Assembly: GCF_046119375.1 (NCBI RefSeq)
Contig: NW_027362765.1
Location: 95,976,001-96,040,000 of the forward strand
Reading direction: 5' to 3'
Origin: Phyllobates terribilis
Lineage: Eukaryota
DNA: 64,000 nt
Translations under genes and position numbers: made by a program
In this document: positions 623-59,054 of the stretch, one piece after another
Numbering within the stretch: the first letter of the stretch is position 1
Layout of the letters: every line of letters starts with the position of its first letter
The notes under the pieces: generated by a model
What the model was told of the DNA's origin: nothing
The model's input: the letters and a program-made list of their open reading frames with translations, nothing else
The model's database searches: none

Positions 623-2268
623 TGGCAAAAATTATGGAATCACCGGACTCGGAGGATGTTCATTCAGTTGTTTAATATTGTTGAAAAAAAGCAGATCACA
701 GACATGGTACAAAACTAAAGTCATTTCAAATGGCAACTTTAGGGTTTAAGAAACACTAAAAGAAATCAAGATTTAAAATGTGGTACTCAGTAAGGGTAAT
801 TTTTTTCAGACCAAGCAGAGGGAAAAAATTATGGAATCACTCAATTCTGAGGAAAAAAATATGGAATCACCCTGTAAATTTTCATTTCCAAAACAAACAC
901 CTGCATCAAATTAGATCTGCTCGTTAGTTTGCATCTAAAAAGGAGTGATCACACCTTGGAGAGCTGTTGCACCAAGTGGACTGACATGAATCATGGCTCC
1001 AACACGAGAGATGTCAATTGAAACAAAGGAGAGGATTATCAAAGTCTTAAAAAAAGGTAAATCATCACCCAATGTTGCAAAAGATGTTGGTTGTTCACAG
1101 TCAGCTGTGTCTAAAATCTGCACCAAATACAAACCACATGGGAAGGTTGTTAAAGGCAAACATACTGGTAGACCTAGGAAGACATCAAAGAGTCAAGACC
1201 GGAAACTTAAAGCAATAGGTCTCCAAAACAGGAAATACACAAAACAATTGAGGAACGAATGGGAGGAAACTGGAGTCAATGACTGTGACCGACCTGTAAG
1301 AAACCGCCTAAAGGAAATGGGATATACATACAGAAAAGCTAAACAAAAGCCATCATTAACACCTAAACAGAAAAAAACAAGGTTACAATGGGCTAAGGAA
1401 AAGCAATCGTGGACTGTGGATGACTGGATGAAAGTCATATTCAGTGATGAATCGCGAATCTGCATTGGGCAAGGTGATGATGCTGGAACTTTTGTTTGGT
1501 GCCGTTCCAATGAGATTTATAAAAATGACTGCATGAAGAGAACATGCAAATTTCCACAGTCATTGATGATATGGGGCTACATGTCAGGTAAAGGCCCAAG
1601 TTTAAATGCCCAAGTTTACATTGATATTTTGGACAGTTTTCTTATCCCATCAATTGAAAAGATGTTTGGGGATGATGACATCATTTTTCAATATGATAAT
1701 GCATCCTGCCATAGAGCAAAAACTGTAAAAACATTCCTTGAAAGAAGACACATAAGGTCAATGTCATGGCCTGCCAATAGTCCGGATCTCAATCCAATTG
1801 AAAATCTTTGGTGGAAGTTGAAGAAAATGGTCCATGACAAGGCTCCAACCTGCAAAGCTGATCTGGCAACAGCAATCAGAGAAAGTTGGAGCCAGATTGA
1901 TGAAGAGTACTGTTTGTCACTCATTAAGTCCATGCCTCAGAGACTGCAAGCTGTTATTAAAGCCAGAGGTAGTGCAACAAAATATTAGTGATGTATTGGA
2001 GTGTTCTTTTGTGTGTTTCCATAATTTTTTCCTCAGAATTGAGTGATTCCATAATTTTTTCCCTCTTCTTGGTCTGAAAAAAATTACCCTTACTGAGTAC
2101 CACATTTTTTAACTTGATTTCTTTTAGTGTTTCTTAAAGCCATAAAGTTGCCATTTGAAATGACTTTAGTTTTGCGCCATGTCTGTGATCTGCTTTTTTT
2201 CAACAACATTAAACAACTGAATGAACATCCTCCGAGCCCGGTGATTCCATCATTTTTGCCAGGGGTTG
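623..2268 (+). mobile_element. Tc1/mariner DNA transposon with long IR/DR-type terminal inverted repeats; outer left end damaged
   Basis: About 250-bp TIRs (tggcaaaaattatggaatcacc ... ggtgattccatcatttttgccaggggttg|TA) with an internally repeated aaaaaattatggaatcac motif; encloses a transposase ORF. Confidence 0.92.
993..1988 (+). CDS. Tc1-family DD34E transposase, open frame but with small in-frame deletions
   Basis: Paired-like HTH N-terminus, [35 protein letters not shown]; segment GKGPSLNAQ looks shortened relative to typical Tc1. Confidence 0.88.
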   Translation: MAPTREMSIETKERIIKVLKKGKSSPNVAKDVGCSQSAVSKICTKYKPHGKVVKGKHTGRPRKTSKSQDRKLKAIGLQNRKYTKQLRNEWEETGVNDCDRPVRNRLKEMGYTYRKAKQKPSLTPKQKKTRLQWAKEKQSWTVDDWMKVIFSDESRICIGQGDDAGTFVWCRSNEIYKNDCMKRTCKFPQSLMIWGYMSGKGPSLNAQVYIDILDSFLIPSIEKMFGDDDIIFQYDNASCHRAKTVKTFLERRHIRSMSWPANSPDLNPIENLWWKLKKMVHDKAPTCKADLATAIRESWSQIDEEYCLSLIKSMPQRLQAVIKARGSATKY

Positions 2269-6899: not shown

Positions 6900-8537
6900 A
6901 GACATTGGTCAACCCTGTATTTATTTCCTGGTGGCTGGTCGCTACAGTGAGGTGTAGTGTGTAGGGATCGGTACAGGACAAGGTCACCCAATTTTGCTTT
7001 TCCGAGGTCTTGGTGTTGACCTGCTGGCTTTCTCTTTTGACAAAAAAACAGAAACTTGCACACACATTGCATTGGTCCCAACTAATAGAGATCTCTGCAA
7101 CATCCACCAGGTTGTGCAGCGCGGGAAAATAAATTATGTAAATCTCCAAAAGATTTGAAAAATTTGCTCCTGGCGTCATTACCAAGCATTGACCACAACA
7201 TATATTATCTGGGATTAAATTATGTTATCTCCATTTTTGGAAAAATCTGCCCCCATCTATTAGCATTAGGGACCGTGTTGGCACCAATAAACCATTCTGC
7301 CATGATCAGGGTATTTAGGCACAGAACCAAGGGTATGAAATAGCCTTCCTTCATCCTGGGCAAAAAAATCTATGACGGTCACCCAACTCCAATCACTCAT
7401 GATGGCATCCCTCTCATCAGACCCTACAATAGAGCACAAATCCCTAATCTTTTTATTTTGGGAAGAAGAAGCCTTCTTCGGTGTCCTTTATTACCCTCTA
7501 TTGGGAGACACAGACAAGTAGGTGGAGCTATTGCTTAGGTGAAGGGGATGTCAGACTTTCTGATAATATAAAGTATATTGTATCGGCTACATTTTTTTGC
7601 CCATATTTTGGGTACTGTATGTCTTACCTCCCCTGTTTAGTTTTTAGTTGTATCATGTCATAATCCAAAATTATGTAATAAAAAAAAAACATTTTTGGTA
7701 GATATGTTTTATTGTATGTCTTTACGCCCTTTCAAGGATCTCTGGTTGAGAGGCAGGTTTCTGAAGCAGGAACCTCTCCCCACCACTCTGTCCGCAGTAA
7801 AGAAACATATCACTTATCAGAAGGATAGGGGCATGAAGGATCACGCTAGCAATCAACTGACAAAGGAGTAAAATGCTTGTTCACCGGCTGATTGGATCAT
7901 TAATTTTGGCAGAACATCATCCTATGTAGACAGGATATATTTTGCCGATAATATGATCGTTCTGTGCTCATATAATCTCATTAACAATTGTTCTGTGTTC
8001 ACAGAATTCTGGTCAGTTTGTCATAACAGGCCATCAAAAGACTGCCTATTGTGTTGTACAGTATATAACCGTATGGCTTTATATACCCCAACAGACTGTA
8101 AATACCCTACTACTGGGACCCCCACCGATCCCGAGAACAAGGCTCTGAAAAGTTCTGTTAGAACGCATCTGTACCCATGAGACAGAGAGAGCATATCAGA
8201 GCCCGATTCTCAGGATTTGTGTGGGTCCCAGTGGTCGTTCCCCCCACCAGTCTGCAAGTTATAACGTACCAATTTTTTTCCTTTTATACAACTATTATGT
8301 TTTGCGTTACTGCATCCAAATAAATTATGGACGGTTAGTACCAACCCTGCCAGCAGGTGACAACTCCAGACCCAAATCTTACTGTGGACATTAAGAGCAT
8401 GTGCGCACTACATATTTTAGATGATGGCATACCCACATCATTTTTAATACAGAAGAAACCAGTAGCGTTTTCCCTGAAGAATTTTTACTAACGTGATTTT
8501 TTGGTGCTGCGCCGCTTTTTTTAAATTCCATATTATA

Positions 8538-8542
<5 letters not shown>

Positions 8543-8598
<56 letters not shown>
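8543..8598. repeat. (TA)n microsatellite
   Basis: Direct inspection; sits where the left TIR of the interrupted Tc1 would be. Confidence 0.95.
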
Positions 8599-8601
<3 letters not shown>

Positions 8602-9617
8602 CTACCTGTCCACTTAGGAAGCAACACTGATTGTGAATCAATTTCTCCTGCTGTTGTGCAAATGGAACAGACAACTAGTAGAAATGATAGACAATTAGCA
8701 AGATACCCTCTATAAAGGAGCGGTACTGCAGGTGGTGACCACAGACCATTTCTCTGTTCTCATCCTTTTTGGCTGTTGTTACAGTCCCTTTTTCATTTTG
8801 CCATTGCTCTTGTTATGCACACGCCCGGGCTAAGCGGCGTGTGCGTGTGATTGGTAGTGATTCCACTGGACCGTGCCGGAGAGTGAATGCCTGGAGGGGC
8901 GTGACTAAGTATTCACCCGATCCGACCAGGGTCGCACGACGGCATACGACGCCAGTGCACCAAGGAGGAACCGAGCAGAGGGACCAGGTGCTACTCCAGG
9001 ACAGACCCCGGACACGGCTGTTGACCCACACAGGGGAATACAGGAACAGGCTGGTAGGCTGGCACACAGACTGGTGGGTATAGGCAGGCACGACTGGTAT
9101 GCAGGCAGGCGGGTATGCAGGCAGGGGGGTAAAGGCAAGCACAGCTAGAGTGCAGACAGGGAGGCACTAGCAGGTAGGAACACAGGCGGGATAGGACCCA
9201 GTACACACCGGGACTCAGGAACATTACAGGCAGAGGGGTACAGGCAGGGCAGGACAGGACTGCCGGAGCAGCGGGCAGAAGCAGGGCAGGACAGGACTGC
9301 CGGAGCAGAACGGACAGGACTCTGTACACACGGAACAGACAGGAAGGGAAAGGCAGAGCCAGATACCCACAGGGTACTTGCAGTGAAGTAGCGAGGGGAC
9401 CACAAACTCACAAACGGGAGTACAGAGACAACAAGCAGGAGTTAGGTACGAGTTCAGACTCTGCAGAAAAAGGAAGGGAACGGACATAGAGGAAAAACAG
9501 GTAAAGGATAGGAGAGAGTTCAGACTGGAACTGAGTGTACGGAGGGGACCGACACTGCAGCGGGATACAGGAGTGGGTCTGGGAATACTGCCCCCAGAGA
9601 GGCGGGACGAACAGGCA

Positions 9618-9805
9618 AGGAGCGTGTTCAGACAGGACAGACAAAATACAGGAGCGGGTCTAGGTAATCGGCCCCTAGAAGGCGGGAGGAACAGGCTAGG
9701 AGCGTGTTCAGACAGGACAGACAAAATACAGGAGCGGGTCTAGGTAATCGGCCCCTAGAAGGCGGGAGGAACAGGCTAGGAGCGTGTTCAGACAGGACAG
9801 ACAAG
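9618..9805. repeat. 80-bp tandem repeat (about 2.3 copies) inside LTR; also at +3492 and +6984
   Basis: aggagcgtgttcagacaggacagaca recurs at 9618, 9698, 9778. Confidence 0.9.
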
Positions 9806-9816
9806 ATACACAGAAA

Positions 9817-10126
9817 GGACTCAGTTCAGACACGGGAACTAATACCGCAAAGCAGGAGACATACAGGACTCAGTTCAGACACGGGAACTAATACCGCAAA
9901 GCAGGAGACATACAGGACTCAGTTCAGACACGGGAACTAATACCGCAAAGCAGGAGACATACAGGACACAGTTCAGACACGGGAACTAATACCGCAAAGC
10001 AGGAGACATACAGGACACAGTTCAGACACGGGAGCTGATACCGCAAAGCAGGAGACATACAGGACACAGTTCAGACACGGGAGCTGATACCGCAAAGCAG
10101 GAGACATACAGGACTAAGTTCAGACA
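9817..10126. repeat. 49-bp tandem repeat (about 6.3 copies) inside LTR; also at +3492 and +6984
   Basis: ggactcagttcagacacgggaactaataccgcaaagcaggagacataca recurs every 49 bp. Confidence 0.92.
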
Positions 10127-10253
10127 GGCCTGGAAATACAGCCTCCAGGAAAGGCAGACAAGGAAACAAAGACGAGACCTGGCACCTTCAGAGTGCAAGC
10201 ACACACTGAAGGAAAACACTATGCTCAGGCAGGGATAGAAGGGAGCTGCTGAG

Positions 10254-12158
10254 CTATATACCAAGTGTCAGACAGCAATAGGCTGAGGACGCACAAGGGG
10301 CGTGACCCACAGCAGGTACAAAGAGCAGGAAGTGATCGGGCGCCGCCCTTAAGCAGCAGAGACAGACACAAACAGACAGCATGGAGGGAAGCCAGAGTGA
10401 CATTCTGGACAGGAGATCAAGTGCGCTCTCTTGCACAGTGGGAGATGGACCACCATGCAAGGACGCCGCCAGGTATGTTACAGTACCTCCCCCCTTACGC
10501 CCCCTCTTCTTCAGGCCTGCCAGAATCTTCCGCAGGGAATTCGAGGACCAGTCGTTCACTGGGTTGGAGGGGGACAGAGACTTGAGGGTAATCTCTGCTT
10601 CGAGGTACATCTTGTCAAGCTCACAGGAAAAAATAGACGGGTTATCAGGTACATAATGAGGAAAAGTCACTGTCTCTTTGTTATCTGGTGGTATCCCGGA
10701 GGATTCAGGAAACAACTGGAGGTCCTCCGCCGGGTCAGAAGAGTGCAGAGGCTCAGAGAAAACAACTGCTTCAGAGTACACTAGGTCGGACTCACTGGAG
10801 GAAGCAGGCGAGGTATCGGGTACCGAGTATAGGAAAGTCTCTGTCCATTCACCACCAGGTGGCACCCCGAAGGGTTCTGAACACAACTGGAGGTCCTCCG
10901 CCTGGTCGGAGGGGTGTAGAGACTCGGGAGTAACCTCTGCTTCGGAGTACACTAGGTCGGACTCACTGGACGAAGCGAGCGAGGTATCAGGTACAGGATA
11001 TAGGAAAGTCTCTGTCCATTCACCACCAGGTGGCACCCCGAAGGATTCTGAACACAACTGGAGGTCCTCCGCCTGGTCGGAGGGGTGTAGAGACTCAGGA
11101 GTAACCTCTGCTTCGGAGTACACTAGGTTGGACTCACTGGACGAAGCGAGCGAGGTATCAGGTACAGAGTATAGGAGAGTCTCTGTCCTTTCGCTACCAG
11201 GTAGCACCCCGAAGGGTTCAGGAGACAACTGGAGATCCTCCGCCTGGTCGGAGGGGTGTAGAGACTCGGAGGTAACTACCACTTTGGGGTACCCATTGTC
11301 AGGCTCACAGGACGAAGCGGACAAGGTATTGAGTACCGGGTGTAGAGAAGTCTCTCTCCATTTGTCATCGAGTGGTATCCCGGAGGATTCAGGAGGCAAC
11401 AGGGGATCCTCCGCCAGGTAGTAGAGGTGCACAGACTCAGAGGTAACCACAGCTTTGGAGCATCCTTGGACATGCACACCGGTTAAAGAGAGAGAAGCAT
11501 CTGATGCCGGGTGCAGGAAGTTCTCCTGTGTGGAGTCTGGATGGGCAGAAGTCTCTTCGGGCAGGAGAACTGGTGCACTACCCACGCACATTACCCATTG
11601 GGGTTTCTCCGGGATACAGGGAGATGAAGCTTCAGTAGGGACTTCAAGGTTGGGGTCAGGAGGTCTCAGGGAGGACAGACCCTGGCGTGACGGCTTGCCT
11701 CTACGTCTAGCACGTCTGGACTGCCTCTTGAGGTTGAGAGAAGTATTCCGGAAAGCGTAGTCACCCTGTGAGGATTCTGGGTGGGCAGTAGTCTCATTGG
11801 GCTGGAGGACTATTGCGCTACCCACACACATTACCCATTGGGGCTGCTCCGGGATATTGGGAGGTGAAGCTTCAGCAGGAGCCTCCGGGTTAGGATCATC
11901 GAAGACCATTAGAAAGGCCACCAGGAAGGCCATTAGGTCCCGGAGGATCGGATCCTGTGTTTCATATAGGGGGTTGATCCATTCCAAGGCATCACCCGCC
12001 AGGTAAGACATAATAAAGGCCACTTTAGCCCAATCGGAAGGAAAATAGAGAGGGTAGGCCTTAAAGTGTAGCATGCATTGCTCCACAAATGCACGACACT
12101 GTCTTGGATCCCCATAGTAACGTGGCGGATCCGCAGGAACGAGAGCTGATAGATCCAT
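10254..12158 (-). CDS. Gag-derived ORF: Sushi/Ty3 capsid N-terminal domain (LDOC1/RTL-like) plus acidic 57-aa repeats, copy 1
   Basis: aa 1-89 PPRYYGDPRQCRAFVEQC..F..YP..FPSDWAKVAFIMSYLAGDALEW..P resembles retrotransposon Gag/RTL domain; 171-nt internal repeats keep frame; 634-aa uninterrupted ORF. Confidence 0.8.
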   Translation of the reverse strand: MDLSALVPADPPRYYGDPRQCRAFVEQCMLHFKAYPLYFPSDWAKVAFIMSYLAGDALEWINPLYETQDPILRDLMAFLVAFLMVFDDPNPEAPAEASPPNIPEQPQWVMCVGSAIVLQPNETTAHPESSQGDYAFRNTSLNLKRQSRRARRRGKPSRQGLSSLRPPDPNLEVPTEASSPCIPEKPQWVMCVGSAPVLLPEETSAHPDSTQENFLHPASDASLSLTGVHVQGCSKAVVTSESVHLYYLAEDPLLPPESSGIPLDDKWRETSLHPVLNTLSASSCEPDNGYPKVVVTSESLHPSDQAEDLQLSPEPFGVLPGSERTETLLYSVPDTSLASSSESNLVYSEAEVTPESLHPSDQAEDLQLCSESFGVPPGGEWTETFLYPVPDTSLASSSESDLVYSEAEVTPESLHPSDQAEDLQLCSEPFGVPPGGEWTETFLYSVPDTSPASSSESDLVYSEAVVFSEPLHSSDPAEDLQLFPESSGIPPDNKETVTFPHYVPDNPSIFSCELDKMYLEAEITLKSLSPSNPVNDWSSNSLRKILAGLKKRGRKGGGTVTYLAASLHGGPSPTVQESALDLLSRMSLWLPSMLSVCVCLCCLRAAPDHFLLFVPAVGHAPCASSAYCCLTLGI

Positions 12159-12290
12159 CTGGACGGTGCGTAATTTCGCCTGGAACTCAGCTAAGAGAAA
12201 AAAAAAAAATTTATTTATTTATTTTAATGCATATATTCGCTGGAAAAACTTCTCAAAGAGCGAAGGCCGTGAGGCTCAACGGGAACCATG

Positions 12291-12300
12291 GCCTGAGCAT
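12291..12300 (-). other. Putative self-priming primer-binding site (also 15783-15792)
   Basis: ATGCTCAGGC on the minus strand, 2 nt inside the 5' LTR end; I do not recognise it as a tRNA 3'-end complement. Confidence 0.7.
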
Positions 12301-13712
12301 GCTGTTATGCACACGCCCGGGCTAAGCGGCGTGTGCGTGTGATTGGTAGTGATTCCACTGGACCGTGCCGGAGAGTGAATGCCTGGAGGGGCGTGACTAA
12401 GTATTCACCCGATCCGACCAGGGTCGCACGACGGCATACGACGCCAGTGCACCAAGGAGGAACCGAGCAGAGGGACCAGGTGCTACTCCAGGACAGACCC
12501 CGGACACGGCTGTTGACCCACACAGGGGAATACAGGAACAGGCTGGTAGGCTGGCACACAGACTGGTGGGTATAGGCAGGCACGACTGGTATGCAGGCAG
12601 GCGGGTATGCAGGCAGGGGGGTAAAGGCAAGCACAGCTAGAGTGCAGACAGGGAGGCACTAGCAGGTAGGAACACAGGCGGGATAGGACCCAGTACACAC
12701 CGGGACTCAGGAACATTACAGGCAGAGGGGTACAGGCAGGGCAGGACAGGACTGCCGGAGCAGCGGGCAGAAGCAGGGCAGGACAGGACTGCCGGAGCAG
12801 AACGGACAGGACTCTGTACACACGGAACAGACAGGAAGGGAAAGGCAGAGCCAGATACCCACAGGGTACTTGCAGTGAAGTAGCGAGGGGACCACAAACT
12901 CACAAACGGGAGTACAGAGACAACAAGCAGGAGTTAGGTACGAGTTCAGACTCTGCAGAAAAAGGAAGGGAACGGACATAGAGGAAAAACAGGTAAAGGA
13001 TAGGAGAGAGTTCAGACTGGAACTGAGTGTACGGAGGGGACCGACACTGCAGCGGGATACAGGAGTGGGTCTGGGAATACTGCCCCCAGAGAGGCGGGAC
13101 GAACAGGCAAGGAGCGTGTTCAGACAGGACAGACAAAATACAGGAGCGGGTCTAGGTAATCGGCCCCTAGAAGGCGGGAGGAACAGGCTAGGAGCGTGTT
13201 CAGACAGGACAGACAAAATACAGGAGCGGGTCTAGGTAATCGGCCCCTAGAAGGCGGGAGGAACAGGCTAGGAGCGTGTTCAGACAGGACAGACAAGATA
13301 CACAGAAAGGACTCAGTTCAGACACGGGAACTAATACCGCAAAGCAGGAGACATACAGGACTCAGTTCAGACACGGGAACTAATACCGCAAAGCAGGAGA
13401 CATACAGGACTCAGTTCAGACACGGGAACTAATACCGCAAAGCAGGAGACATACAGGACACAGTTCAGACACGGGAACTAATACCGCAAAGCAGGAGACA
13501 TACAGGACACAGTTCAGACACGGGAGCTGATACCGCAAAGCAGGAGACATACAGGACACAGTTCAGACACGGGAGCTGATACCGCAAAGCAGGAGACATA
13601 CAGGACTAAGTTCAGACAGGCCTGGAAATACAGCCTCCAGGAAAGGCAGACAAGGAAACAAAGACGAGACCTGGCACCTTCAGAGTGCAAGCACACACTG
13701 AAGGAAAACACT

Positions 13713-13752
13713 ATGCTCAGGCAGGGATAGAAGGGAGCTGCTGAGCTATATA
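13713..13752 (-). promoter_or_regulatory. LTR promoter: TATATA box (13747-13752) and predicted TSS at 13722 (same at 10221-10260 and 17205-17244)
   Basis: Minus-strand TATATA lies 30 nt upstream of GCCTGAGCAT, the exact complement of the PBS-position sequence. Confidence 0.65.
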
Positions 13753-15650
13753 CCAAGTGTCAGACAGCAATAGGCTGAGGACGCACAAGGGGCGTGACCC
13801 ACAGCAGGTACAAAGAGCAGGAAGTGATCGGGCGCCGCCCTTAAGCAGCAGAGACAGACACAAACAGACAGCATGGAGGGAAGCCAGAGTGACATTCTGG
13901 ACAGGAGATCAAGTGCGCTCTCTTGCACAGTGGGAGATGGACCACCATGCAAGGACGCCGCCAGGTATGTTACAGTACCTCCCCCCTTACGCCCCCTCTT
14001 CTTCAGGCCTGCCAGAATCTTCCGCAGGGAATTCGAGGACCAGTCGTTCACTGGGTTGGAGGGGGACAGAGACTTGAGGGTAATCTCTGCTTCGAGGTAC
14101 ATCTTGTCAAGCTCACAGGAAAAAATAGACGGGTTATCAGGTACATAATGAGGAAAAGTCACTGTCTCTTTGTTATCTGGTGGTATCCCGGAGGATTCAG
14201 GAAACAACTGGAGGTCCTCCGCCGGGTCAGAAGAGTGCAGAGGCTCAGAGAAAACAACTGCTTCAGAGTACACTAGGTCGGACTCACTGGAGGAAGCAGG
14301 CGAGGTATCGGGTACCGAGTATAGGAAAGTCTCTGTCCATTCACCACCAGGTGGCACCCCGAAGGGTTCTGAACACAACTGGAGGTCCTCCGCCTGGTCG
14401 GAGGGGTGTAGAGACTCGGGAGTAACCTCTGCTTCGGAGTACACTAGGTCGGACTCACTGGACGAAGCGAGCGAGGTATCAGGTACAGGATATAGGAAAG
14501 TCTCTGTCCATTCACCACCAGGTGGCACCCCGAAGGATTCTGAACACAACTGGAGGTCCTCCGCCTGGTCGGAGGGGTGTAGAGACTCAGGAGTAACCTC
14601 TGCTTCGGAGTACACTAGGTTGGACTCACTGGACGAAGCGAGCGAGGTATCAGGTACAGAGTATAGGAGAGTCTCTGTCCTTTCGCTACCAGGTAGCACC
14701 CCGAAGGGTTCAGGAGACAACTGGAGATCCTCCGCCTGGTCGGAGGGGTGTAGAGACTCGGAGGTAACTACCACTTTGGGGTACCCATTGTCAGGCTCAC
14801 AGGACGAAGCGGACAAGGTATTGAGTACCGGGTGTAGAGAAGTCTCTCTCCATTTGTCATCGAGTGGTATCCCGGAGGATTCAGGAGGCAACAGGGGATC
14901 CTCCGCCAGGTAGTAGAGGTGCACAGACTCAGAGGTAACCACAGCTTTGGAGCATCCTTGGACATGCACACCGGTTAAAGAGAGAGAAGCATCTGATGCC
15001 GGGTGCAGGAAGTTCTCCTGTGTGGAGTCTGGATGGGCAGAAGTCTCTTCGGGCAGGAGAACTGGTGCACTACCCACGCACATTACCCATTGGGGTTTCT
15101 CCGGGATACAGGGAGATGAAGCTTCAGTAGGGACTTCAAGGTTGGGGTCAGGAGGTCTCAGGGAGGACAGACCCTGGCGTGACGGCTTGCCTCTACGTCT
15201 AGCACGTCTGGACTGCCTCTTGAGGTTGAGAGAAGTATTCCGGAAAGCGTAGTCACCCTGTGAGGATTCTGGGTGGGCAGTAGTCTCATTGGGCTGGAGG
15301 ACTATTGCGCTACCCACACACATTACCCATTGGGGCTGCTCCGGGATATTGGGAGGTGAAGCTTCAGCAGGAGCCTCCGGGTTAGGATCATCGAAGACCA
15401 TTAGAAAGGCCACCAGGAAGGCCATTAGGTCCCGGAGGATCGGATCCTGTGTTTCATATAGGGGGTTGATCCATTCCAAGGCATCACCCGCCAGGTAAGA
15501 CATAATAAAGGCCACTTTAGCCCAATCGGAAGGAAAATAGAGAGGGTAGGCCTTAAAGTGTAGCATGCATTGCTCCACAAATGCACGACACTGTCTTGGA
15601 TCCCCATAGTAACGTGGCGGATCCGCAGGAACGAGAGCTGATAGATCCAT
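13746..15650 (-). CDS. Gag-derived ORF copy 2 (translation identical to copy 1)
   Basis: ORF track gives identical 634-aa protein at +3492. Confidence 0.8.
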   Translation of the reverse strand: MDLSALVPADPPRYYGDPRQCRAFVEQCMLHFKAYPLYFPSDWAKVAFIMSYLAGDALEWINPLYETQDPILRDLMAFLVAFLMVFDDPNPEAPAEASPPNIPEQPQWVMCVGSAIVLQPNETTAHPESSQGDYAFRNTSLNLKRQSRRARRRGKPSRQGLSSLRPPDPNLEVPTEASSPCIPEKPQWVMCVGSAPVLLPEETSAHPDSTQENFLHPASDASLSLTGVHVQGCSKAVVTSESVHLYYLAEDPLLPPESSGIPLDDKWRETSLHPVLNTLSASSCEPDNGYPKVVVTSESLHPSDQAEDLQLSPEPFGVLPGSERTETLLYSVPDTSLASSSESNLVYSEAEVTPESLHPSDQAEDLQLCSESFGVPPGGEWTETFLYPVPDTSLASSSESDLVYSEAEVTPESLHPSDQAEDLQLCSEPFGVPPGGEWTETFLYSVPDTSPASSSESDLVYSEAVVFSEPLHSSDPAEDLQLFPESSGIPPDNKETVTFPHYVPDNPSIFSCELDKMYLEAEITLKSLSPSNPVNDWSSNSLRKILAGLKKRGRKGGGTVTYLAASLHGGPSPTVQESALDLLSRMSLWLPSMLSVCVCLCCLRAAPDHFLLFVPAVGHAPCASSAYCCLTLGI

Positions 15651-18600
15651 CTGGACGGTGCGTAATTTCGCCTGGAACTCAGCTAAGAGAAAAAAAAAAA
15701 ATTTATTTATTTATTTTAATGCATATATTCGCTGGAAAAACTTCTCAAAGAGCGAAGGCCGTGAGGCTCAACGGGAACCATGGCCTGAGCATGCTGTTAT
15801 GCACACGCCCGGGCTAAGCGGCGTGTGCGTGTGATTGGTAGTGATTCCACTGGACCGTGCCGGAGAGTGAATGCCTGGAGGGGCGTGACTAAGTATTCAC
15901 CCGATCCGACCAGGGTCGCACGACGGCATACGACGCCAGTGCACCAAGGAGGAACCGAGCAGAGGGACCAGGTGCTACTCCAGGACAGACCCCGGACACG
16001 GCTGTTGACCCACACAGGGGAATACAGGAACAGGCTGGTAGGCTGGCACACAGACTGGTGGGTATAGGCAGGCACGACTGGTATGCAGGCAGGCGGGTAT
16101 GCAGGCAGGGGGGTAAAGGCAAGCACAGCTAGAGTGCAGACAGGGAGGCACTAGCAGGTAGGAACACAGGCGGGATAGGACCCAGTACACACCGGGACTC
16201 AGGAACATTACAGGCAGAGGGGTACAGGCAGGGCAGGACAGGACTGCCGGAGCAGCGGGCAGAAGCAGGGCAGGACAGGACTGCCGGAGCAGAACGGACA
16301 GGACTCTGTACACACGGAACAGACAGGAAGGGAAAGGCAGAGCCAGATACCCACAGGGTACTTGCAGTGAAGTAGCGAGGGGACCACAAACTCACAAACG
16401 GGAGTACAGAGACAACAAGCAGGAGTTAGGTACGAGTTCAGACTCTGCAGAAAAAGGAAGGGAACGGACATAGAGGAAAAACAGGTAAAGGATAGGAGAG
16501 AGTTCAGACTGGAACTGAGTGTACGGAGGGGACCGACACTGCAGCGGGATACAGGAGTGGGTCTGGGAATACTGCCCCCAGAGAGGCGGGACGAACAGGC
16601 AAGGAGCGTGTTCAGACAGGACAGACAAAATACAGGAGCGGGTCTAGGTAATCGGCCCCTAGAAGGCGGGAGGAACAGGCTAGGAGCGTGTTCAGACAGG
16701 ACAGACAAAATACAGGAGCGGGTCTAGGTAATCGGCCCCTAGAAGGCGGGAGGAACAGGCTAGGAGCGTGTTCAGACAGGACAGACAAGATACACAGAAA
16801 GGACTCAGTTCAGACACGGGAACTAATACCGCAAAGCAGGAGACATACAGGACTCAGTTCAGACACGGGAACTAATACCGCAAAGCAGGAGACATACAGG
16901 ACTCAGTTCAGACACGGGAACTAATACCGCAAAGCAGGAGACATACAGGACACAGTTCAGACACGGGAACTAATACCGCAAAGCAGGAGACATACAGGAC
17001 ACAGTTCAGACACGGGAGCTGATACCGCAAAGCAGGAGACATACAGGACACAGTTCAGACACGGGAGCTGATACCGCAAAGCAGGAGACATACAGGACTA
17101 AGTTCAGACAGGCCTGGAAATACAGCCTCCAGGAAAGGCAGACAAGGAAACAAAGACGAGACCTGGCACCTTCAGAGTGCAAGCACACACTGAAGGAAAA
17201 CACTATGCTCAGGCAGGGATAGAAGGGAGCTGCTGAGCTATATACCAAGTGTCAGACAGCAATAGGCTGAGGACGCACAAGGGGCGTGACCCACAGCAGG
17301 TACAAAGAGCAGGAAGTGATCGGGCGCCGCCCTTAAGCAGCAGAGACAGACACAAACAGACAGCATGGAGGGAAGCCAGAGTGACATTCTGGACAGGAGA
17401 TCAAGTGCGCTCTCTTGCACAGTGGGAGATGGACCACCATGCAAGGACGCCGCCAGGTATGTTACAGCTCTCACCCCTAGAAGTACAGTAGCATGAGGCG
17501 GTGTCTACAGTACAACCCACAGAAGTTGCTCAAGTAGTGCAGTTCATCCAGGATGGCACATCAATACGAGCTGTGGCAAGAAGGGTAGCTGTGTCTGTCA
17601 GCACAGTGTCCAGAGCATGGACCACATACCAGGAGATGTGGAGGGAGACATAGGAGGGCTACAACCCAGCAGCAGGACCATTACCTCCTCCTTTGTGCAA
17701 GGAGGAACAGGAGGAGCACTGCCAGAGCCCTGCAAAATGACCTCCAGCAGGCCACAAATGTGCATGTGTCTGCACAAACGGTTAGAAACCGACTCCATGA
17801 GGGTGGTATGAGGGCCCGACGTCCACAGATGGGGGTTCTGCTCACAGCCTAACACTGTGCAGGACACTTGGCATTTGCCACAGAACACCAGGATTGGCAA
17901 AGTCGCTACTGGCGCCCTGTGTTCTTCACAGATGAAAGCTGGTTCACACTGAGCACATGTGACAGACATGACAGAGTCTGGAGACGCTGTGGAGAACGAT
18001 CTGCTGCCTGCAACATCCTTCAGCATGACCGTTTTATCAATGGGTCAGTAATGGTATGGGGTGGCATTTGTTTGGAGGGTGGCACAGCCCTCCATGTGCT
18101 CGCCAGAGGTAGCCTGACTGCCATTAGGTACCGAGATGAGATCCTCAGACCCCTTGTGAGACCATATGCTGGTGCGGTTGGCCCTGGGTTCCTCCTAATG
18201 CAGGACAATGCCAGACCTCATGTGGCTGGAGTGTGTCAGCAGTTCCTGCAAGATGAAGGAATTGAAGCTATGGACTGGCCCGCCCGTTCCCCAGACCTGA
18301 ATCCGATTGAGCACATCTGGGATATCATGTCTCGCTCCATCCACCAACATCACGTTGCACCACAGACTGTCCAGGAGTTGGCGGATGCTTTAGTCCAGGT
18401 CTGGGAGGAGATCCCACAGGAGACCATCCGCAACCTCATCAGGAGCATGCCCAGGCATTGTAGGGAGGTCATACAGGCACGTGGATTCCACACACAATAC
18501 CGAGCCTCATTTTGACTTGTTTTAAGGACATTACATCAAAGTTGGATCAGCCTGTAGTGTGTTTTTCCACTTTAATTTTGGGGGTGACTCCAAATCCAGG

Positions 18601-18757: not shown

Positions 18758-18762
<5 letters not shown>

Positions 18763-18824
<62 letters not shown>
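18763..18824. repeat. (TA)n microsatellite
   Basis: Direct inspection. Confidence 0.95.
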
Positions 18825-18833
<9 letters not shown>

Positions 18834-24973: not shown

Positions 24974-25189
24974 NNNNNNNNNNNNNNNNNNNNNNNNNNN
25001 NNNNNNNNNNNNNNNNNNNNNNNNNNNNNNNNNNNNNNNNNNNNNNNNNNNNNNNNNNNNNNNNNNNNNNNNNNNNNNNNNNNNNNNNNNNNNNNNNNNN
25101 NNNNNNNNNNNNNNNNNNNNNNNNNNNNNNNNNNNNNNNNNNNNNNNNNNNNNNNNNNNNNNNNNNNNNNNNNNNNNNNNNNNNNNNNN
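24974..25189. other. Assembly gap (216 N)
   Basis: N run. Confidence 1.
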
Positions 25190-28032
25190 CACACCTTCTC
25201 ATTTAAAGATTTTTCTGTATTTTCATGACTATGAAAATTGTACATTCACACTGAAGGCATCAAAACTATGAATTAACACATGTGGAATTATATACTTAAC
25301 AAAAAAGTGTGAAACAACTGAAAATATGTCTTATATTCTAGGTTCTTCAAAGTAGCCACCTTTTGCTTTGATGACTGCTTTGCACACTCTTGGCATTCTC
25401 TTGATGAGCTTCAAGAGGTAGTCACAGGAAATGTTCTACTGTAGCACCCTGAGGATTCGGCTGCTACAGGGGTATTGCACCTCAAACCAGAGGTGTGATA
25501 TTCCACTCCCGGGTAAGGATGGAGCGTGGAACTGAGCTAGTAGGCTGCATGCACTACATACATCCCATTTCCGGGGGACAGATCGACGGTACTCCCACCA
25601 GTTTATGTGCAGGTACAATAGTGTCTGTCCCTGGCTGGAGTAAGAGGGGGGTGGAACATCCCAGTAGTGTAGGGGCAGATAGGGGGGAGCAGTTTGGGTA
25701 AAGCTAGGAGCTCATTGGGTGCTGGTCACCTGAGCTCACACATAGAGGGAGTATATAAGGTGGGCACCATCTTAGATCAGAGTCAGTCTGTCAGAGTTGA
25801 GTCAGAGGAGCAGAGCAGAGAAGCTCAGCCAGAAGGGCTGACAGGGGAGTTGTGGTTCCGGCTGGGCCCAGCTCCAAGGCCAAGAGAGAGAGGAGTCAGA
25901 AGGACCCAGAGAGAAGGAGAAGGAACCCCAAGACCCCAGAATACAAGCAACAGGGTGAAGGGTTGGCACCTAGGGTACCGGATCCCAAGCTGGCAGAGAG
26001 AAAAGCACACCTTAGCCAGAGACCGGAGGTCGTGGGCAGGATCTGCCACGACCCTCACCAAATCCACCAGGAAGGCAGACCAAGTATAGGGTCAGGGAAC
26101 CCAGAAGAGGTGTACCCACCAAGAGACCCGAGGGAGCCGGACATAGGTGGATCCCTGGTGAGAACGGCCAGAAGAGAGGGAAAGTCAGACAGGAGCTCAG
26201 GACCACACTCCAGAATTACTTGGGGGTTGGCCGAGTCCAGGACCTGGTGGACGCAGCACGGCTCGGGTGGTCGCTTCAGGCCAGAGTGACCATAAGAACA
26301 CCCGTAAGTAAAAACCCCTGAACTGCACAGCCCGACTCTGAGTCTTCTTGCTGATTCATCCTGCACCTGCACAACCACCATCCTCTACACCTGACCCCCT
26401 GAGGCTATACCCCTCCCGTTGGGGGTTATACTACCAGAGCTGCACACACACCACCAGCCTCAGCGGACCCTTCTGCAGCGGCGGCCTTGTGACCGCAAAT
26501 CAACGGGTGGCGTAGTCGACATTAAGGACCCTTAACAACATCTGTAAAGACTGCCACACACTGAGTTTGACACCCTGGGCACGGACCGGGTCACCGCCAC
26601 TCGGAGACTACAACCCCCATCTGATCCGGCTCCGGGTAATCCCCAAACAGCACTGGCCCAGGGGGCGCGTCACTACCAACAATCTTGAAGGAGTTCCCAG
26701 AGATGCTTAGCACTTGTTGGCCCTTTTGCCTTCACTCTGCGGTCCAGCTCACCCCAAACCATCTCGATTGGGTTCAGGTCTGGTGACTGTGGAGGCCAGG
26801 TCATCTGGCGTAGCACCCCATCACTCTCCTTCTTGGTCAAATAGCCCTTACACAGCCTGGAGATGTGTTTGGGGTCATTGTCCTGTTGAAAAATAAATGA
26901 TGGTGCAACTAAACGCAAACCGGATGGAATAGCATGCCGCTGCAAGATGCTGTGGTAGCCATGCTGGTTCAGTATGCCTTCAATTTTGAATAAATCCCCA
27001 ACAGTGTCACCAGCAAAGCACCCCCACACCATCACACCTCCTCCTCCATGCTTCACGGTGGGAACCAGGCATGTAGAGTCCATCCGTTCACCTTTTCTGC
27101 GTCGCACAAAGACACGGTGGTTGGAGCCAAAGATCTCAAATTTGGACACATCAGACCAAAGCACAGATTTCCACTGGTCTAATGTCCATTCCTTGTGTTC
27201 TTTAGCCCAAACAAGTCTCTTCTGCTTGTTGCCTGTCCTTAGCAGTGGTTTCCTAGCAGCTATTTTACCATGAAGGCCTGCTGCACAAAGTCTCCTCTTA
27301 ATAGTTGTTGAAGAGATGTGTCTGCTGCTAGAACTCTGTGTGGCATTGACCTGGTCTCTAATCTGAGCTGCTGTTAACCTGTGATTTCTGAGGCTGGTGA
27401 CGCGGATAAACTTATCCTCAGAAGCAGAGGTGACTCTTGGTCTTCCTTTCCTGGGGCGGTCCTCATGTGAGCCAGTTTCTTTGTAGCGCTTGATGGTTTT
27501 TGCAACTGCACTTGAGGACACTTTCAAAGTTTGCCCAATTTTTCGGACTGACTCACCTTCATTTCTTAAAGTAATGATGGCCACTTGTTTTTCTTTACTT
27601 AGAATTTGTATTATGGCAAGAAAAAAGCAGCTAACAGTCTATTCAGTAGGACTATCAGCTATGTATCCACCAGACTTCTGCACAACACAACTGATGGTCC
27701 AACCCCATTTATAAGGCAAGAAATCCCACTTATTAAACCTGACAGGGCACACCTGTGAAGTGAAAACCATTTCCGGTTACTACCTCTTGAAGCTCATCAA
27801 GAGAATGCCAAGAGTGTGCAAAGCAGTCATCAAAGCAAAAGGTGTCTACTTTGAAGAACCTAGAATATAAGACATATTTTCAGTTGTTTCACACTTTTTT
27901 GTTAAGTATATAATTCCACATGTGTTAATTCATAGTTTTGATGCCTCCAGTGTGAATGTACAATTTTCAAAGTCATGAAAATACAGAAAAATCTTTAAAT
28001 GAGAAGGTGTGTCCAAATTTTTGGTCTGTACT
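25190..28032 (-). mobile_element. Tc1 element with about 200-bp TIRs; transposase 26673-27584 interrupted near C-terminus by a solo LTR
   Basis: TIRs cacaccttctcatttaaag... / ...gagaaggtgtgtccaaatttttggtctgtactg|TA; [19 protein letters not shown]; C-terminal KRMPRVCKAVIKAKGGYFEE resumes below 25436. Confidence 0.9.
25440..26672. mobile_element. Solo LTR (1233 bp) inserted in Tc1 transposase
   Basis: TGTAGCACCCTGAGG...GGGGGCGCGTCA; 4-bp TSD CTAC. Confidence 0.85.
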
Positions 28033-28178: not shown

Positions 28179-29818
<1,640 letters not shown>

Positions 29819-32328: not shown

Positions 32329-32943
32329 TAAATTAAGGTAAGCTTCCAGGAGTTCACAACTGAGCAGATTAACCCCTGCACTGCTAAAAGAACCTACACC
32401 ATTTAATATGAAGGCGAAAGGCTTCTAATGAGTGCAGGAGTGGAAGGAATCAGACACTGCAGTCTTCTGGCTCCTCTGTCGCAGTAAACTCGTGACATTA
32501 TTAGAGACAACTTCTTAGATGAGGCACACCATGTGCCCGACCTTCTCCGTACCCCCAGCCATAAAATATATGGACTGGCTCATTACTTATGTCCTAATAC
32601 GGCATAAGGACAAAGCTTGTCTTTAGGATACAACCCTCTTTAAAACTGGTCATAGACCTCATAAATTTGATCTTCAAACGCTATTTTACAGGGTAGATGT
32701 AGGTAAAATCAGTCCTGTAGATATCCTGAGTTATATCATGTATTATACTCCAGAGCTGCACTCACTATTCTGTTCACGATAATTAGACGAGCTTGCTGAC
32801 AACTCTGGTAAAATATAAGCTGCGCTGTCATTGGACATTACAAAATGCTTCAAGAGTATGATATAAAATGCAAGTCTGGATTACAACATGGGTGTGCTTT
32901 ATAGACAACAATCCCCAAATAATTTGACTTAACCGATACTTAC

Positions 32944-33548
32944 AAATTTGAGGTCCAGTCCTGGTAGGACTGCGCACCACAACACTCCATGCCAAGCTGT
33001 ATTTCATCCAATATAAACTTGAGGTCTGAATCATCTTGGTATCTGTTCACGGCTACCATCATGGTCTTCTTCATCGAATCCTCAATCTGTTTGTGAAAAC
33101 ACAGTACCACCAGGGACACCAAACATTGTGCAATCAAAAGCGTAGTAATCCCAGCAAAAAAAAGCTTGAGGAGACAAATGTTCTCTCTGATGAAGCCAAC
33201 GCATCCAGAGAAAGACAAGACACAGACGACCAAGCCCACCAGTACAAACACAAGCATGGGGTCGGTTCCCAGATTATTGATCTGCTCACCCATCAAGGAC
33301 TGCTTGTCCGCAAGGCCCCAAAATCCTATGCACAGCAGTCCAAAGCCCAGCGTAAAGAAGATGAAGTTGAGAAAGAACATGAAATATTTGATGAAGGGTA
33401 GAAATGGATCGGGATGATGGCCTCGAGGTGGTGGCCAGTCTTTCGGCACAATGGAGAATGGGGAGTTGTCCACTTCAGCATTACTATGGGTGTAGTATTG
33501 GAAGTCATTCGATTCCTGGCCGTATTTTCTATTCCATTTTTGAGCATC
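32944..33548 (-). CDS. TSPAN10: Tetraspanin-10 large middle coding exon (TM1-3, CCG motif)
   Basis: Acceptor ctcaatttcag|GAT GCT; KYFMFFLNFIF..GCVGFIREN..ECCGAQSYQDW; donor TT|GTAAGT, phase 2 matches next exon; position between PDE6G and NPLOC4. Confidence 0.92.
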
Positions 33549-46156: not shown

Positions 46157-46296
46157 NNNNNNNNNNNNNNNNNNNNNNNNNNNNNNNNNNNNNNNNNNNN
46201 NNNNNNNNNNNNNNNNNNNNNNNNNNNNNNNNNNNNNNNNNNNNNNNNNNNNNNNNNNNNNNNNNNNNNNNNNNNNNNNNNNNNNNNNNNNNNNNN
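46157..46296. other. Assembly gap (140 N)
   Basis: N run. Confidence 1.
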
Positions 46297-48860: not shown

Positions 48861-48946
<86 letters not shown>

Positions 48947-49571: not shown

Positions 49572-49641
49572 GCTCACACAATTCCATGTTGGTGCAGTGT
49601 CATGTTGTAAAATCTTCTCTTTTTGTGTTTTTTTTCCACAG

Positions 49642-59044: not shown

Positions 59045-59054
59045 ATTCAATGGC

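What the first reader, a model, noticed from the sequence alone, without database searches (positions are those of the whole stretch)
10254..12158. Capsid-NTD-only Gag fused to expanding acidic repeats: architecture convergent with mammalian LDOC1/RTL8
Only about 89 aa resemble Sushi/Ty3 Gag, the capsid N-terminal segment also kept in domesticated RTL/SIRH proteins. No capsid C-terminal domain or CCHC knuckle is visible. It is followed by a duplicated 28-aa motif (DPNxExPxEASxPxIPExPQWVMCVGSA) flanking an Arg-rich patch (KRQSRRARRRGK), then about five 57-aa (171-nt) Ser/Pro/Glu/Asp repeats. The repeat copies have diverged by substitutions yet the 634-codon frame has no stop or frameshift, hinting at selection on the protein. 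Hypothesis: it co-assembles with helper capsids, either to favour packaging of its own RNA via the basic patch or as a dominant-negative modulator, as reported for RTL8 with PEG10.
Basis: partly seen in the sequence, partly recalled or inferred. Interest (0 to 1): 0.8.

Follow-up and report, generated by a model that had tools for sequence, protein, structure and literature searches.

The report
Half-capsid gene in parasitic retrotransposon
The open reading frame is real, but it is the only gene of a very young, helper-dependent LTR retrotransposon, probably in an amphibian-type genome; it keeps exactly the N-terminal half of a Ty3/gypsy capsid fused to a long acidic repeat tail, the domain plan of mammalian LDOC1/RTL8/RTL5 genes, here still inside a mobile element.

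Summary
A 634-codon ORF lies on the minus strand at 10254-12158. Residues 9-89 are a Ty3/gypsy capsid N-terminal domain (Pfam DUF4939 above threshold; 1656 relatives; confident 4-5-helix model). Homology stops exactly at the NTD/CTD linker. After it come a duplicated 44-aa motif, an Arg-rich patch and about 5.6 units of 57 aa.

The ORF sits in an LTR retrotransposon with no pol, arranged as a perfect tandem dimer (LTR-int-LTR-int-LTR, 8811-17466). It has 1672-bp identical LTRs, a polypurine tract and a 5-bp target duplication (AGAGC). A second identical ORF lies at 13746-15650. The last 76 codons are LTR read-through.

Selection evidence is mixed. There are no stops where about 5-8 are expected (P 0.008-0.0002), and both repeat periods are multiples of three. 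But substitutions between the 171-nt units show no frame-specific amino-acid constraint.

So this is not a host LDOC1-like gene. It is a TE-borne half-capsid in a non-autonomous element. Co-assembly with a helper Gag is plausible but untested. No other copies could be retrieved.

Verdict: new variant of a known kind, moderate interest.

The parts
17467..17471 (-). Target-site duplication, 5' side (AGAGC on the minus strand)
15795..17466 (-). LTR 1 (1672 bp, TGTAAC...ATAACA), 5' LTR of the upstream unit
   Evidence: 100% identical to LTR 2 and LTR 3
13975..15794 (-). Internal region, upstream unit (1820 bp)
   Evidence: 3492-bp period with no mismatch
13746..15650 (-). Second, identical copy of the 634-aa ORF
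12303..13974 (-). LTR 2, shared by the two units (3' LTR of the upstream unit, 5' LTR of the downstream unit)
10483..12302 (-). Internal region, downstream unit (1820 bp): 144-nt leader, ORF, PPT; no pol
12159..12302 (-). Leader with three short uORFs, a candidate primer-binding site (TGGTTCCC starting 15 nt after the LTR) and a T13CTCTTAG acceptor-like tract
   Evidence: PBS assignment not confirmed
10254..12158 (-). The flagged 634-aa ORF
11892..12134 (-). Capsid N-terminal domain, aa 9-89
11814..11897 (-). 28-aa motif, copy 1 (aa 88-115), starting at the former NTD/CTD linker
11694..11729 (-). Arg-rich patch KRQSRRARRRGK (aa 144-155)
11574..11657 (-). 28-aa motif, copy 2 (aa 168-195)
10562..11525 (-). 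171-nt (57-codon) tandem array, about 5.6 units, acidic and Ser/Pro-rich; central units 95% identical, outer units 43-78%
10486..10511 (-). Polypurine tract AAGAAGAGGGGGCGTAAGGGGGGAGG, translated as KKRGRKGGG
8811..10482 (-). LTR 3 (3' LTR); its first 229 nt encode the last 76 aa of the ORF
9565..10126 (-). Tandem arrays inside each LTR: 49 bp x 6.3 (9816-10126) and 80 bp x 3.1 (9565-9810); the same arrays recur in LTR 1 and LTR 2
8806..8810 (-). Target-site duplication, 3' side (AGAGC)

Best explanation
The locus is a very recently inserted, non-autonomous Ty3/gypsy-type LTR retrotransposon on the minus strand, present as a head-to-tail dimer that shares its middle LTR. Its 1.8-kb internal region holds one ORF and no protease, RT, RNase H or integrase, so it must be copied by the Gag-Pol of an autonomous relative elsewhere in the genome. 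The ORF keeps an intact capsid N-terminal domain. It has lost the coiled-coil N-terminus, the capsid C-terminal domain and the zinc knuckle. From the old NTD/CTD linker it continues in frame into an acidic, probably disordered tail built from a 240-nt duplication and a 171-nt array, and it runs through the polypurine tract into U3. Shown here: element anatomy, domain identity, breakpoint, repeat structure and stop-codon avoidance. Inferred: the element lineage has been selected to keep this frame open. The product probably docks through NTD-NTD contacts onto the helper's assembling Gag lattice, as RTL8 does on PEG10. That would bring the element's own RNA, perhaps held by the Arg-rich patch, into helper particles. 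At high dose it would be expected to disturb assembly, because it lacks the CTD and NC needed to close a shell. My probabilities: element identity about 0.9; ORF kept open by selection about 0.55; co-assembly with helper Gag as the function about 0.3.
For: Element anatomy. The 3492-bp period is perfect over 8811-17466. The LTRs are 1672 bp with TG...CA ends, a PPT abuts each downstream LTR, and AGAGC flanks both ends. Self-BLAST shows the 1820-nt internal region is a leader, the NTD codons and repeats only.
NTD identity. DUF4939 scores above threshold. The HMMER scan gave 1656 hits at E<=1e-3; the best are amphibian Gag or Gag-Pol at 52-56% identity, carrying Retrotrans_gag, Ty3_capsid, PR, RNase H and integrase domains. 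A profile of relatives hits Ty3 Gag 6R22 at E 0.0018, and PEG10 CA-CTD 7LGA from profile position 88, exactly where the query diverges. The AlphaFold model has pLDDT 91-98 for residues 11-90 with helices at 18-34, 42-51, 55-66 and 70-86. The top fold matches are dArc1, Ty3, PNMA2 and Arc capsids with TM about 0.55-0.58. The NTD scores 114 bits against an HMM built without it, within the members' range of 108-153.
Openness. There are 0 stops in 472 post-NTD codons, against 5-37 in the other five frames. About 4.8-8.3 new stops are expected from the repeat tree length times 3.7% per substitution, giving P(0) of 0.008-0.0002, and every control frame has 4-10 unit-specific stop columns. Both repeat periods (240 and 171 nt) are multiples of three. 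The duplicated motif has pN/pS 0.49 against 0.93-1.11 in four control frames, and PQWVMCVGSA shows 2 synonymous and 0 non-synonymous changes.
Precedent. RTL8 is NTD-only, enters PEG10 particles through NTD contacts and lowers VLP yield (PMC11684626). Half-capsid genes recur in mammals (PMC10516033).
Against: Between the 171-nt units, pN/pS is 0.63 in the ORF frame and 0.58-0.63 in three control frames, and differences are flat over codon positions (67/55/71). So there is no sign of amino-acid-level constraint on most of the protein. One antisense frame is also open for 247 codons. The motif signal rests on 27 substitutions, and one antisense frame gives 0.43. The last 76 codons are U3 sequence on an A-poor strand where stops are rare. 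No second independent copy, no helper element and no expression data were available. The primer-binding site is not convincingly identified. All fold-search E-values are above 0.3.
Confidence: 0.5

Rival explanations
1. Functionless relic. A deletion derivative of a gag-pol element kept a gag stub by accident. The internal minisatellites happened to be stop-free in that frame and were amplified recently, so the long ORF reflects youth, composition and repeat structure, and the protein, if made at all, does nothing.
For: There is no frame-specific constraint between the 171-nt units. The central units are 84-95% identical, meaning recent amplification. An antisense frame is open for 247 codons. 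The ORF simply runs on into the LTR until the first stop. The minus strand is A-poor. Many amphibian gene models are truncated or chimeric gag stubs.
Against: Zero stops against an expected 5-8 across diverged units. Both repeat periods are divisible by three and in frame with the NTD. The deletion end-points coincide with domain boundaries on both sides of the NTD, and an ATG lies 8 codons before it. The NTD shows no decay. The motif has excess synonymous change.
Confidence: 0.25
2. The frame is kept open for the sake of the RNA, not the protein. An ORF reaching almost to the 3' end (through the PPT into U3) keeps ribosomes on the genomic RNA and avoids the long-3'-UTR trigger of nonsense-mediated decay. 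Selection would then act against stops only.
For: This predicts exactly the observed pattern: stop avoidance without amino-acid constraint, and an ORF that ends only 229 nt into the 3' LTR. That retroviral RNAs need protection from NMD downstream of gag is general knowledge, not tested here.
Against: It does not explain why an intact, precisely excised NTD is kept at the start, nor the mild constraint on the duplicated motif. No data on RNA stability are available.
Confidence: 0.12
3. Dominant-negative half-capsid. The product mainly poisons assembly of related autonomous elements. It would be a competition weapon between elements or an incipient host-beneficial restriction factor, analogous to RTL8 on PEG10 or, for the other capsid half, Ty1 p22/Drt2.
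For: It has an NTD-only architecture without CTD or NC. RTL8 and an isolated PEG10 NTD both reduce VLP release (PMC11684626). Solved Ty1 p22 and Drt2 CA-CTD restriction factors appear among the fold matches, showing that self-encoded half-capsid inhibitors exist.
Against: The element depends on a helper and has just transposed or duplicated (identical LTRs and intact TSD), so strong poisoning would be self-defeating. There are no dose or expression data.
Confidence: 0.1
4. Host gene. This is a domesticated LDOC1/RTL8-like gene of the organism rather than part of a mobile element.
For: The DUF4939 match, and amphibian RefSeq sets with many 'LDOC1-like' models that end at the same linker.
Against: The ORF is bracketed by identical 1672-bp LTRs with a PPT and a 5-bp TSD, is duplicated with them, and reads into the LTR. 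No orthologue was found in any protein search.
Confidence: 0.03

Closest known systems
RTL8 (RTL8A/B/C), eutherian domesticated half-capsid
   Same: It has a capsid N-terminal lobe only, a very short N-terminus before the lobe, no CTD and no zinc knuckle, and belongs to the same Pfam family (DUF4939). RTL8 binds the PEG10 CA-NTD, enters PEG10 particles and lowers their yield (PMC11684626), which is the working model proposed here.
   Different: RTL8 is a 113-aa host gene without LTRs, conserved under purifying selection in eutherians. This ORF is 634 aa, carries about 470 aa of acidic repeats, and lies inside a structurally intact non-autonomous LTR element.
LDOC1 (RTL7) and RTL5, eutherian Gag-like genes with acidic C-termini
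   Same: Each has a Sushi/Ty3-type capsid N-lobe followed by an acidic tail. LDOC1 ends in DDDEDDDDEEEEDD (PMC12853606). RTL5 is 599 aa with pI 4.39 (PMC9641642), compared with 634 aa and pI 4.43 here. Henriques et al. describe several RTL/SIRH 'half-capsid' genes (PMC10516033).
   Different: LDOC1 and RTL5 keep an N-terminal leucine zipper, which is absent here. Their tails are not 57-aa tandem repeats. They are host genes; this ORF is TE-borne and of independent, non-mammalian origin.
TR-GAG elements (plant non-autonomous LTR retrotransposons that encode only GAG; PMC4350172)
   Same: Both have LTRs, a PPT, a TSD, a single gag-derived ORF and no pol, and are presumed to be mobilised in trans.
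   Different: TR-GAGs are described in plants, are under 4 kb and encode a complete GAG with a zinc knuckle. Here the monomer is 5164 bp (2 x 1672 + 1820), from an animal genome, and only the NTD half of the capsid remains, fused to repeats.
Ty1 p22 / Drt2 (self-encoded or endogenised Gag CA-CTD restriction factors of yeast)
   Same: It is a retrotransposon-derived protein made of one capsid half that acts on the full-length Gag lattice. Their structures surfaced in the fold search.
   Different: Those factors are the C-terminal half of a Ty1/copia capsid. This is the N-terminal half of a Ty3/gypsy capsid, and an inhibitory role is not shown here.
Amphibian Ty3/gypsy Gag and 'LDOC1-like' gene models (e.g. 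Ranitomeya XP_077136974, Rhinatrema XP_029442985)
   Same: These are the closest sequence relatives of the NTD at 52-56% identity. Several 128-166-aa models end at the same linker.
   Different: Full Gags carry a coiled coil, CA-CTD and CCHC. The short models keep the coiled coil and lack any long tail. None of the 154 retrieved relatives has an acidic repeat extension.

Membership tests
LTR retrotransposon, Ty3/gypsy (Metaviridae) lineage | Two direct long terminal repeats ending TG...CA | tested here: met
   Three identical 1672-bp LTRs, TGTAAC...ATAACA
LTR retrotransposon, Ty3/gypsy (Metaviridae) lineage | Short target-site duplication flanking the element | tested here: met
   AGAGC at 17467-17471 and 8806-8810
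LTR retrotransposon, Ty3/gypsy (Metaviridae) lineage | Polypurine tract immediately 5' of the 3' LTR | tested here: met
   26-nt purine tract at 10486-10511 and 13978-14003
LTR retrotransposon, Ty3/gypsy (Metaviridae) lineage | tRNA primer-binding site next to the 5' LTR | tested here: inconclusive
   The only TGG-initiated candidate (TGGTTCCC...) starts 15 nt after the LTR. The window has no tRNA gene to compare with. A resemblance to the tRNA-Glu 3' end is from memory only.
LTR retrotransposon, Ty3/gypsy (Metaviridae) lineage | Gag homologous to Ty3/Sushi capsid | tested here: met
   DUF4939; relatives carry Ty3_capsid and Retrotrans_gag; the relatives' profile hits Ty3 6R22 at E 0.0018
LTR retrotransposon, Ty3/gypsy (Metaviridae) lineage | pol (PR-RT-RH-IN), required for an autonomous member | tested here: not met
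   The internal region is 1820 nt of leader, NTD and repeats, and Pfam finds no enzyme domain. The element is therefore non-autonomous.
TR-GAG (non-autonomous, GAG-only LTR elements) | LTR/PPT/TSD plus a single gag ORF and no pol | tested here: met
TR-GAG (non-autonomous, GAG-only LTR elements) | Complete GAG (capsid plus zinc knuckle), length under 4 kb, plant host (PMC4350172) | tested here: not met
   Only the CA-NTD is kept; the monomer is 5164 bp; the closest relatives are amphibian
LDOC1/RTL8-type domesticated half-capsid genes | DUF4939 capsid N-lobe without CTD or NC | tested here: met
LDOC1/RTL8-type domesticated half-capsid genes | Host gene: no LTRs, fixed syntenic orthologues, purifying selection between species | tested here: not met
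   The ORF is embedded in an LTR element with a TSD, and no orthologue was found. Between-species dN/dS is not testable here.
LDOC1/RTL8-type domesticated half-capsid genes | Binding to or interference with a full-length Gag (RTL8-PEG10) | not testable with these tools
   Needs co-expression or VLP assays
Ty1 p22/Drt2-type half-capsid restriction factors | Consists of the capsid C-terminal domain | tested here: not met
   The retained half is the NTD; the CTD-homologous region starts where the query's homology ends

The most novel reading that the evidence does not exclude
A helper-dependent retrotransposon of a lower vertebrate has evolved its own RTL8-like half-capsid: an NTD-only protein with an acidic disordered tail and a basic RNA-binding patch. 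It would use this to plug into, and be packaged by or compete with, the capsid of its autonomous relative. That would be a living example of the pre-domestication state from which LDOC1/RTL8/RTL5-type genes arose. It would also show that the half-capsid architecture is first selected at the level of parasitic elements, before any host co-option.
Probability: 0.25. Interest if true: 0.75.

Novelty: new variant of a known kind. Interest (0 to 1): 0.5.

Why it matters
Half-capsid genes (LDOC1, RTL8 and others) are so far known as domesticated host genes of mammals. How a capsid comes to be cut exactly at its inter-domain linker and given an acidic tail is unknown. Here the same architecture sits in a structurally intact, apparently just-active non-autonomous element. 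This suggests the truncation and tail may arise and be maintained during parasite-on-parasite evolution among retrotransposons. It also offers a natural pair, half-capsid element plus autonomous helper, for testing how an NTD-only protein affects Ty3/gypsy capsid assembly. If the ORF instead proves to be an unselected relic, the locus is an ordinary deletion derivative, and its main value is as a caution about long ORFs across in-frame minisatellites.

Tried and rejected
1. Word-index protein searches with the whole ORF, with aa 1-100 scored in the whole-length context, and with aa 1-230 returned nothing. Only the full HMMER scan of aa 1-100 found relatives.
2. An exact look-up of the ORF in public assemblies found nothing on record.
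3. DNA around the closest Ranitomeya relatives could not be served because the files are too large. LTR, PBS and PPT could therefore not be compared with a candidate helper.
4. Scans of viral and metagenome contigs for further copies found none.
5. A single-sequence search of the NTD against PDB gave no significant hit. The profile search was needed.
6. A helper in the window was sought and rejected. tblastn finds the ORF only in the two units. The RT-bearing ORFs at 54-60 kb have no gag or integrase signal. No LTR-related sequence lies elsewhere in the window.
7. NTD-plus-long-tail relatives were checked as precedents. The 16 found are chimeric or degenerate models, and none is acidic-repeat.
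8. Rfam and tRNA scans were empty.
9. The idea that the insertion split a Tc1-like transposon was not established. Only AT microsatellites match across the site, although a Tc1-like transposase copy starts about 120 nt away.
10. ESCRT late-domain or LIR-type motifs in the repeats were considered by eye and not pursued, because no clean match was seen.
11. Human origin was considered and rejected: the window has Tc1/Sleeping-Beauty-like transposases and the best hits are amphibian. The N runs at 24974-25189 and 46157-46296 were left untouched.
Full report
OBSERVATION. The ORF is real. It lies at 10254..12158 on the minus strand, starts with ATG and has 634 codons. An in-frame stop lies 17 codons upstream, so it cannot be longer. 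Pfam places residues 11-86 in DUF4939, the RTL1-8/LDOC1 Gag-like family, at E 1.7e-7 and 31.5 bits, above the 29-bit cut-off; no other family matches. The 28-aa motif occurs at aa 88-115 and 168-195, and the Arg-rich patch is aa 144-155. At DNA level the motif belongs to a 134-nt duplication, 81% identical, offset by 240 nt. It is followed by a 171-nt array of about 5.6 units with no indels. The central units are 84-95% identical and the outer ones 43-78%.

The sequence from 8811 to 17466 repeats with a 3492-bp period and not one mismatch. Read on the minus strand it is LTR-internal-LTR-internal-LTR.
- The three LTRs are 1672 bp each (15795-17466, 12303-13974, 8811-10482) and run TGTAAC...ATAACA.
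- The two internal regions are 1820 bp each.
- A 26-nt polypurine tract abuts each downstream LTR.
- The whole array is flanked by a 5-bp duplication, AGAGC.
- A second, identical ORF lies at 13746..15650.
- Each LTR carries 49-bp x 6.3 and 80-bp x 3.1 arrays.
- The internal region contains only a 144-nt leader, the ORF and the PPT, with no room and no signal for protease, RT, RNase H or integrase.
- The ORF has no stop before the PPT. The PPT is translated as KKRGRKGGG, and the last 76 residues are encoded by U3 of the LTR.
This is a non-autonomous LTR retrotransposon. It inserted or duplicated so recently that its LTRs are still identical. A dimer sharing the middle LTR is what unequal LTR-LTR exchange would produce; an assembly artefact cannot be excluded for the dimer. 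The window itself looks like a lower-vertebrate genome, with about eight Tc1/Sleeping-Beauty-like transposase copies. I do not take it for human.

THE N-TERMINAL DOMAIN. Word-index searches found nothing, so I ran the full HMMER scan on aa 1-100. It gave 1656 hits at E<=1e-3 and 97 at E<=1e-10. The best hits, at 52-56% identity, are amphibian: Ranitomeya variabilis XP_077136974, a R. imitator Gag-Pol chimera, and a Rhinatrema 'LDOC1'. The longer relatives carry Retrotrans_gag and Ty3_capsid plus aspartic protease, RNase H and integrase, and P0003 has a CCHC knuckle.

In those relatives the matched segment starts near residue 90-100, after a coiled-coil region. In the query it starts at residue 9, so the N-terminal region is missing as well. 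Aligned to 19 relatives, similarity runs to VFDDPN (aa 85-90, against VFDEPGR in the relatives) and then stops abruptly. A profile of that alignment hits Ty3 Gag (6R22, E 0.0018). It also hits the crystal structure of the PEG10 capsid C-terminal domain (7LGA, E 1.6e-14) from profile position 88 onward, which is exactly where the query departs. The break therefore sits at the NTD/CTD linker.

An AlphaFold2 model built with 48 homologues has pLDDT 91-98 over residues 11-90 and helices at 18-34, 42-51, 55-66, 70-73 and 75-86. Its best PDB fold matches are dArc1, Ty3, PNMA2 and Arc capsid lobes, with TM about 0.55-0.58 and rmsd 2.5-3.2 A. All E-values are above 0.3, as expected for so small a domain, so this is supportive only. 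Against an HMM built without it, the NTD scores 114 bits, inside the range of bona fide members (108-153). It keeps every invariant and near-invariant residue. The NTD is thus intact, not decaying.

THE TAIL. Residues 90-558 are Ser (15%), Pro (12%), Leu (10%) and Glu (10%) rich, with a net charge of -46. The whole protein has pI 4.43, and the repeats have 59 D+E against 10 K+R. A single-sequence AlphaFold run shows no secondary structure and pLDDT around 30 for residues 83-532. This fits disorder, but such a run cannot prove it. No Pfam family or database protein resembles the tail.

IS THE FRAME UNDER SELECTION? Evidence for:
- The 472 post-NTD codons have no stop, while the other five frames have 5-37.
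- A neighbour-joining tree of the six units implies about 130-230 substitutions. With 3.7% of single-base changes creating a stop in this frame, 4.8-8.3 stops are expected, so P(0) is 0.008-0.0002. Every control frame shows 4-10 unit-specific stop columns.
- Both repeat periods are multiples of three and in frame with the NTD.
- In the duplicated motif pN/pS is 0.49, against 0.93-1.11 in four control frames. The ten-residue block PQWVMCVGSA has two synonymous and no non-synonymous changes.
Evidence against:
- Between the 171-nt units pN/pS is 0.63, the same as in three control frames (0.58-0.63). Differences are flat across codon positions (67/55/71).
- One antisense frame is open for 247 codons.
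- The motif signal rests on 27 changes, and one antisense frame gives 0.43.
- The ORF was noticed because it is long.
My reading is that there is fair evidence for selection to keep the frame open and for constraint on the NTD, possibly on the motif, and none for the amino-acid sequence of the acidic repeats.

HOW IT MOST LIKELY WORKS. Shown: the element cannot replicate alone, and it encodes an intact capsid N-lobe without the parts needed to close a shell (CTD) or bind RNA through a knuckle (NC). Inferred: the LTR-driven RNA serves both as mRNA and as a template that a related autonomous element's Gag-Pol packages and copies. The half-capsid binds the helper Gag through NTD-NTD contacts, as shown for RTL8 and for an isolated PEG10 NTD with PEG10 (PMC11684626). 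For a parasite that needs the helper, the useful outcome is access to particles for its own RNA, perhaps via the Arg-rich patch. Interference at high dose would be a side effect.

Three rivals remain live:
- The ORF is a functionless relic of a deletion derivative.
- The frame is kept open only to keep ribosomes on the RNA up to U3 and so avoid decay. This would neatly explain stop avoidance without amino-acid constraint, but not the intact, precisely excised NTD.
- The protein is chiefly a dominant-negative inhibitor.
A domesticated host gene is excluded by the LTRs, PPT and TSD.

COMPARISON AND NOVELTY. By domain plan the protein resembles several known genes:
- RTL8: N-lobe only, with a short N-terminus.
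- LDOC1: N-lobe plus an acidic tail (PMC12853606).
- RTL5: 599 aa, pI 4.39 (PMC9641642).
Henriques et al. describe such 'half-capsid' genes as recurrent in mammals (PMC10516033). It fails membership of that group on the defining point of being a host gene. As a mobile element it is closest to the plant TR-GAG class (PMC4350172), but it fails that on complete GAG, on size and on host. Ty1 p22 and Drt2 are half-capsid factors made of the other capsid half.

Amphibian RefSeq sets contain many 128-166-aa 'LDOC1-like' models (coiled coil plus NTD) that end at the same linker, so truncation at this point recurs. None of the 154 retrieved relatives has an acidic repeat tail, and none was shown to sit in an intact LTR element. 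I therefore rate it a new variant of a known kind. The proposed function is plausible and untested.

LIMITS. Only one locus was available: two identical units. No other copy, no helper and no expression data could be obtained. The expected-stop estimate therefore uses pairwise distances and per-codon stop-neighbour counts on the natural sequence only. The primer-binding site is unresolved. The N runs were not touched.

Noticed in passing
window 8811-17466: The retrotransposon is a perfect head-to-tail dimer (LTR-int-LTR-int-LTR, 3492-bp period, 0 mismatches) bounded by a single TSD. Either this is a very recent unequal LTR-LTR exchange or multimer integration, or it is an assembly duplication.
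   Followed up: partly
window 9565-10126 (also 13057-13618 and 16549-17110): Each LTR contains a 49-bp x 6.3 array (98% matches) and an 80-bp x 3.1 array (94%). They are possibly enhancer-like repeats in U3.
   Followed up: no
window 12190-12208 (minus strand): A T13CTCTTAG tract, resembling a polypyrimidine tract plus splice acceptor, lies about 30 nt upstream of the ORF's ATG and is preceded by AATAAATAAATAAA. It could mark a spliced sub-genomic message or a captured exon border.
   Followed up: no
window 993-1988, 17595-18500, 26676-27620, 28519-29596, 41154-42410, 44890-45848, 62495-63492: About eight Tc1/Sleeping-Beauty-like transposase copies, one with an intact 331-aa ORF (993-1988). 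The LTR element is inserted about 120 nt upstream of the 17595-18500 copy.
   Followed up: partly
window 8530-8599 and 18762-18825: (AT)n and (TA)n microsatellites lie on either side of the insertion. They are the only similarity found across the site.
   Followed up: partly
window 32940-33743 (-): A 267-aa single ORF with a Tetraspanin domain (E 1.6e-29). It could be a large exon or an intronless copy.
   Followed up: no
window 53621-53917 (+): A 98-aa ORF matches the NPL4 zinc-binding region (E 7e-15), probably an exon of a host gene.
   Followed up: no
window 54679-59876 (+): A run of overlapping ORFs includes a reverse transcriptase (RVT_1, 57226-58191). No gag, integrase or LTR was detected. 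It is a different, unclassified retroelement and not the helper of the flagged element.
   Followed up: partly
window 36631-37700 and 48120-49615: Two minisatellite blocks: 12/24-nt units at about 36.6-37.7 kb, and 43-nt units with strong GC skew (0.47) at about 48.1-49.6 kb. Both create long spurious ORFs.
   Followed up: no
proteins P0004, P0015, P0016, P0041, P0058, P0113 (amphibian RefSeq): Six amphibian genomes (Rhinatrema, Rhinoderma, Dendrobates, Rana, Ambystoma, Dendropsophus) carry 128-166-aa 'LDOC1(-like)' gene models made of a coiled coil plus CA-NTD. They stop at or within a few residues of the same NTD/CTD linker. Whether they are genes or TE stubs is unknown.
   Followed up: partly
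window 24974-25189 and 46157-46296: Two runs of N (216 and 140 bases).
   Followed up: no
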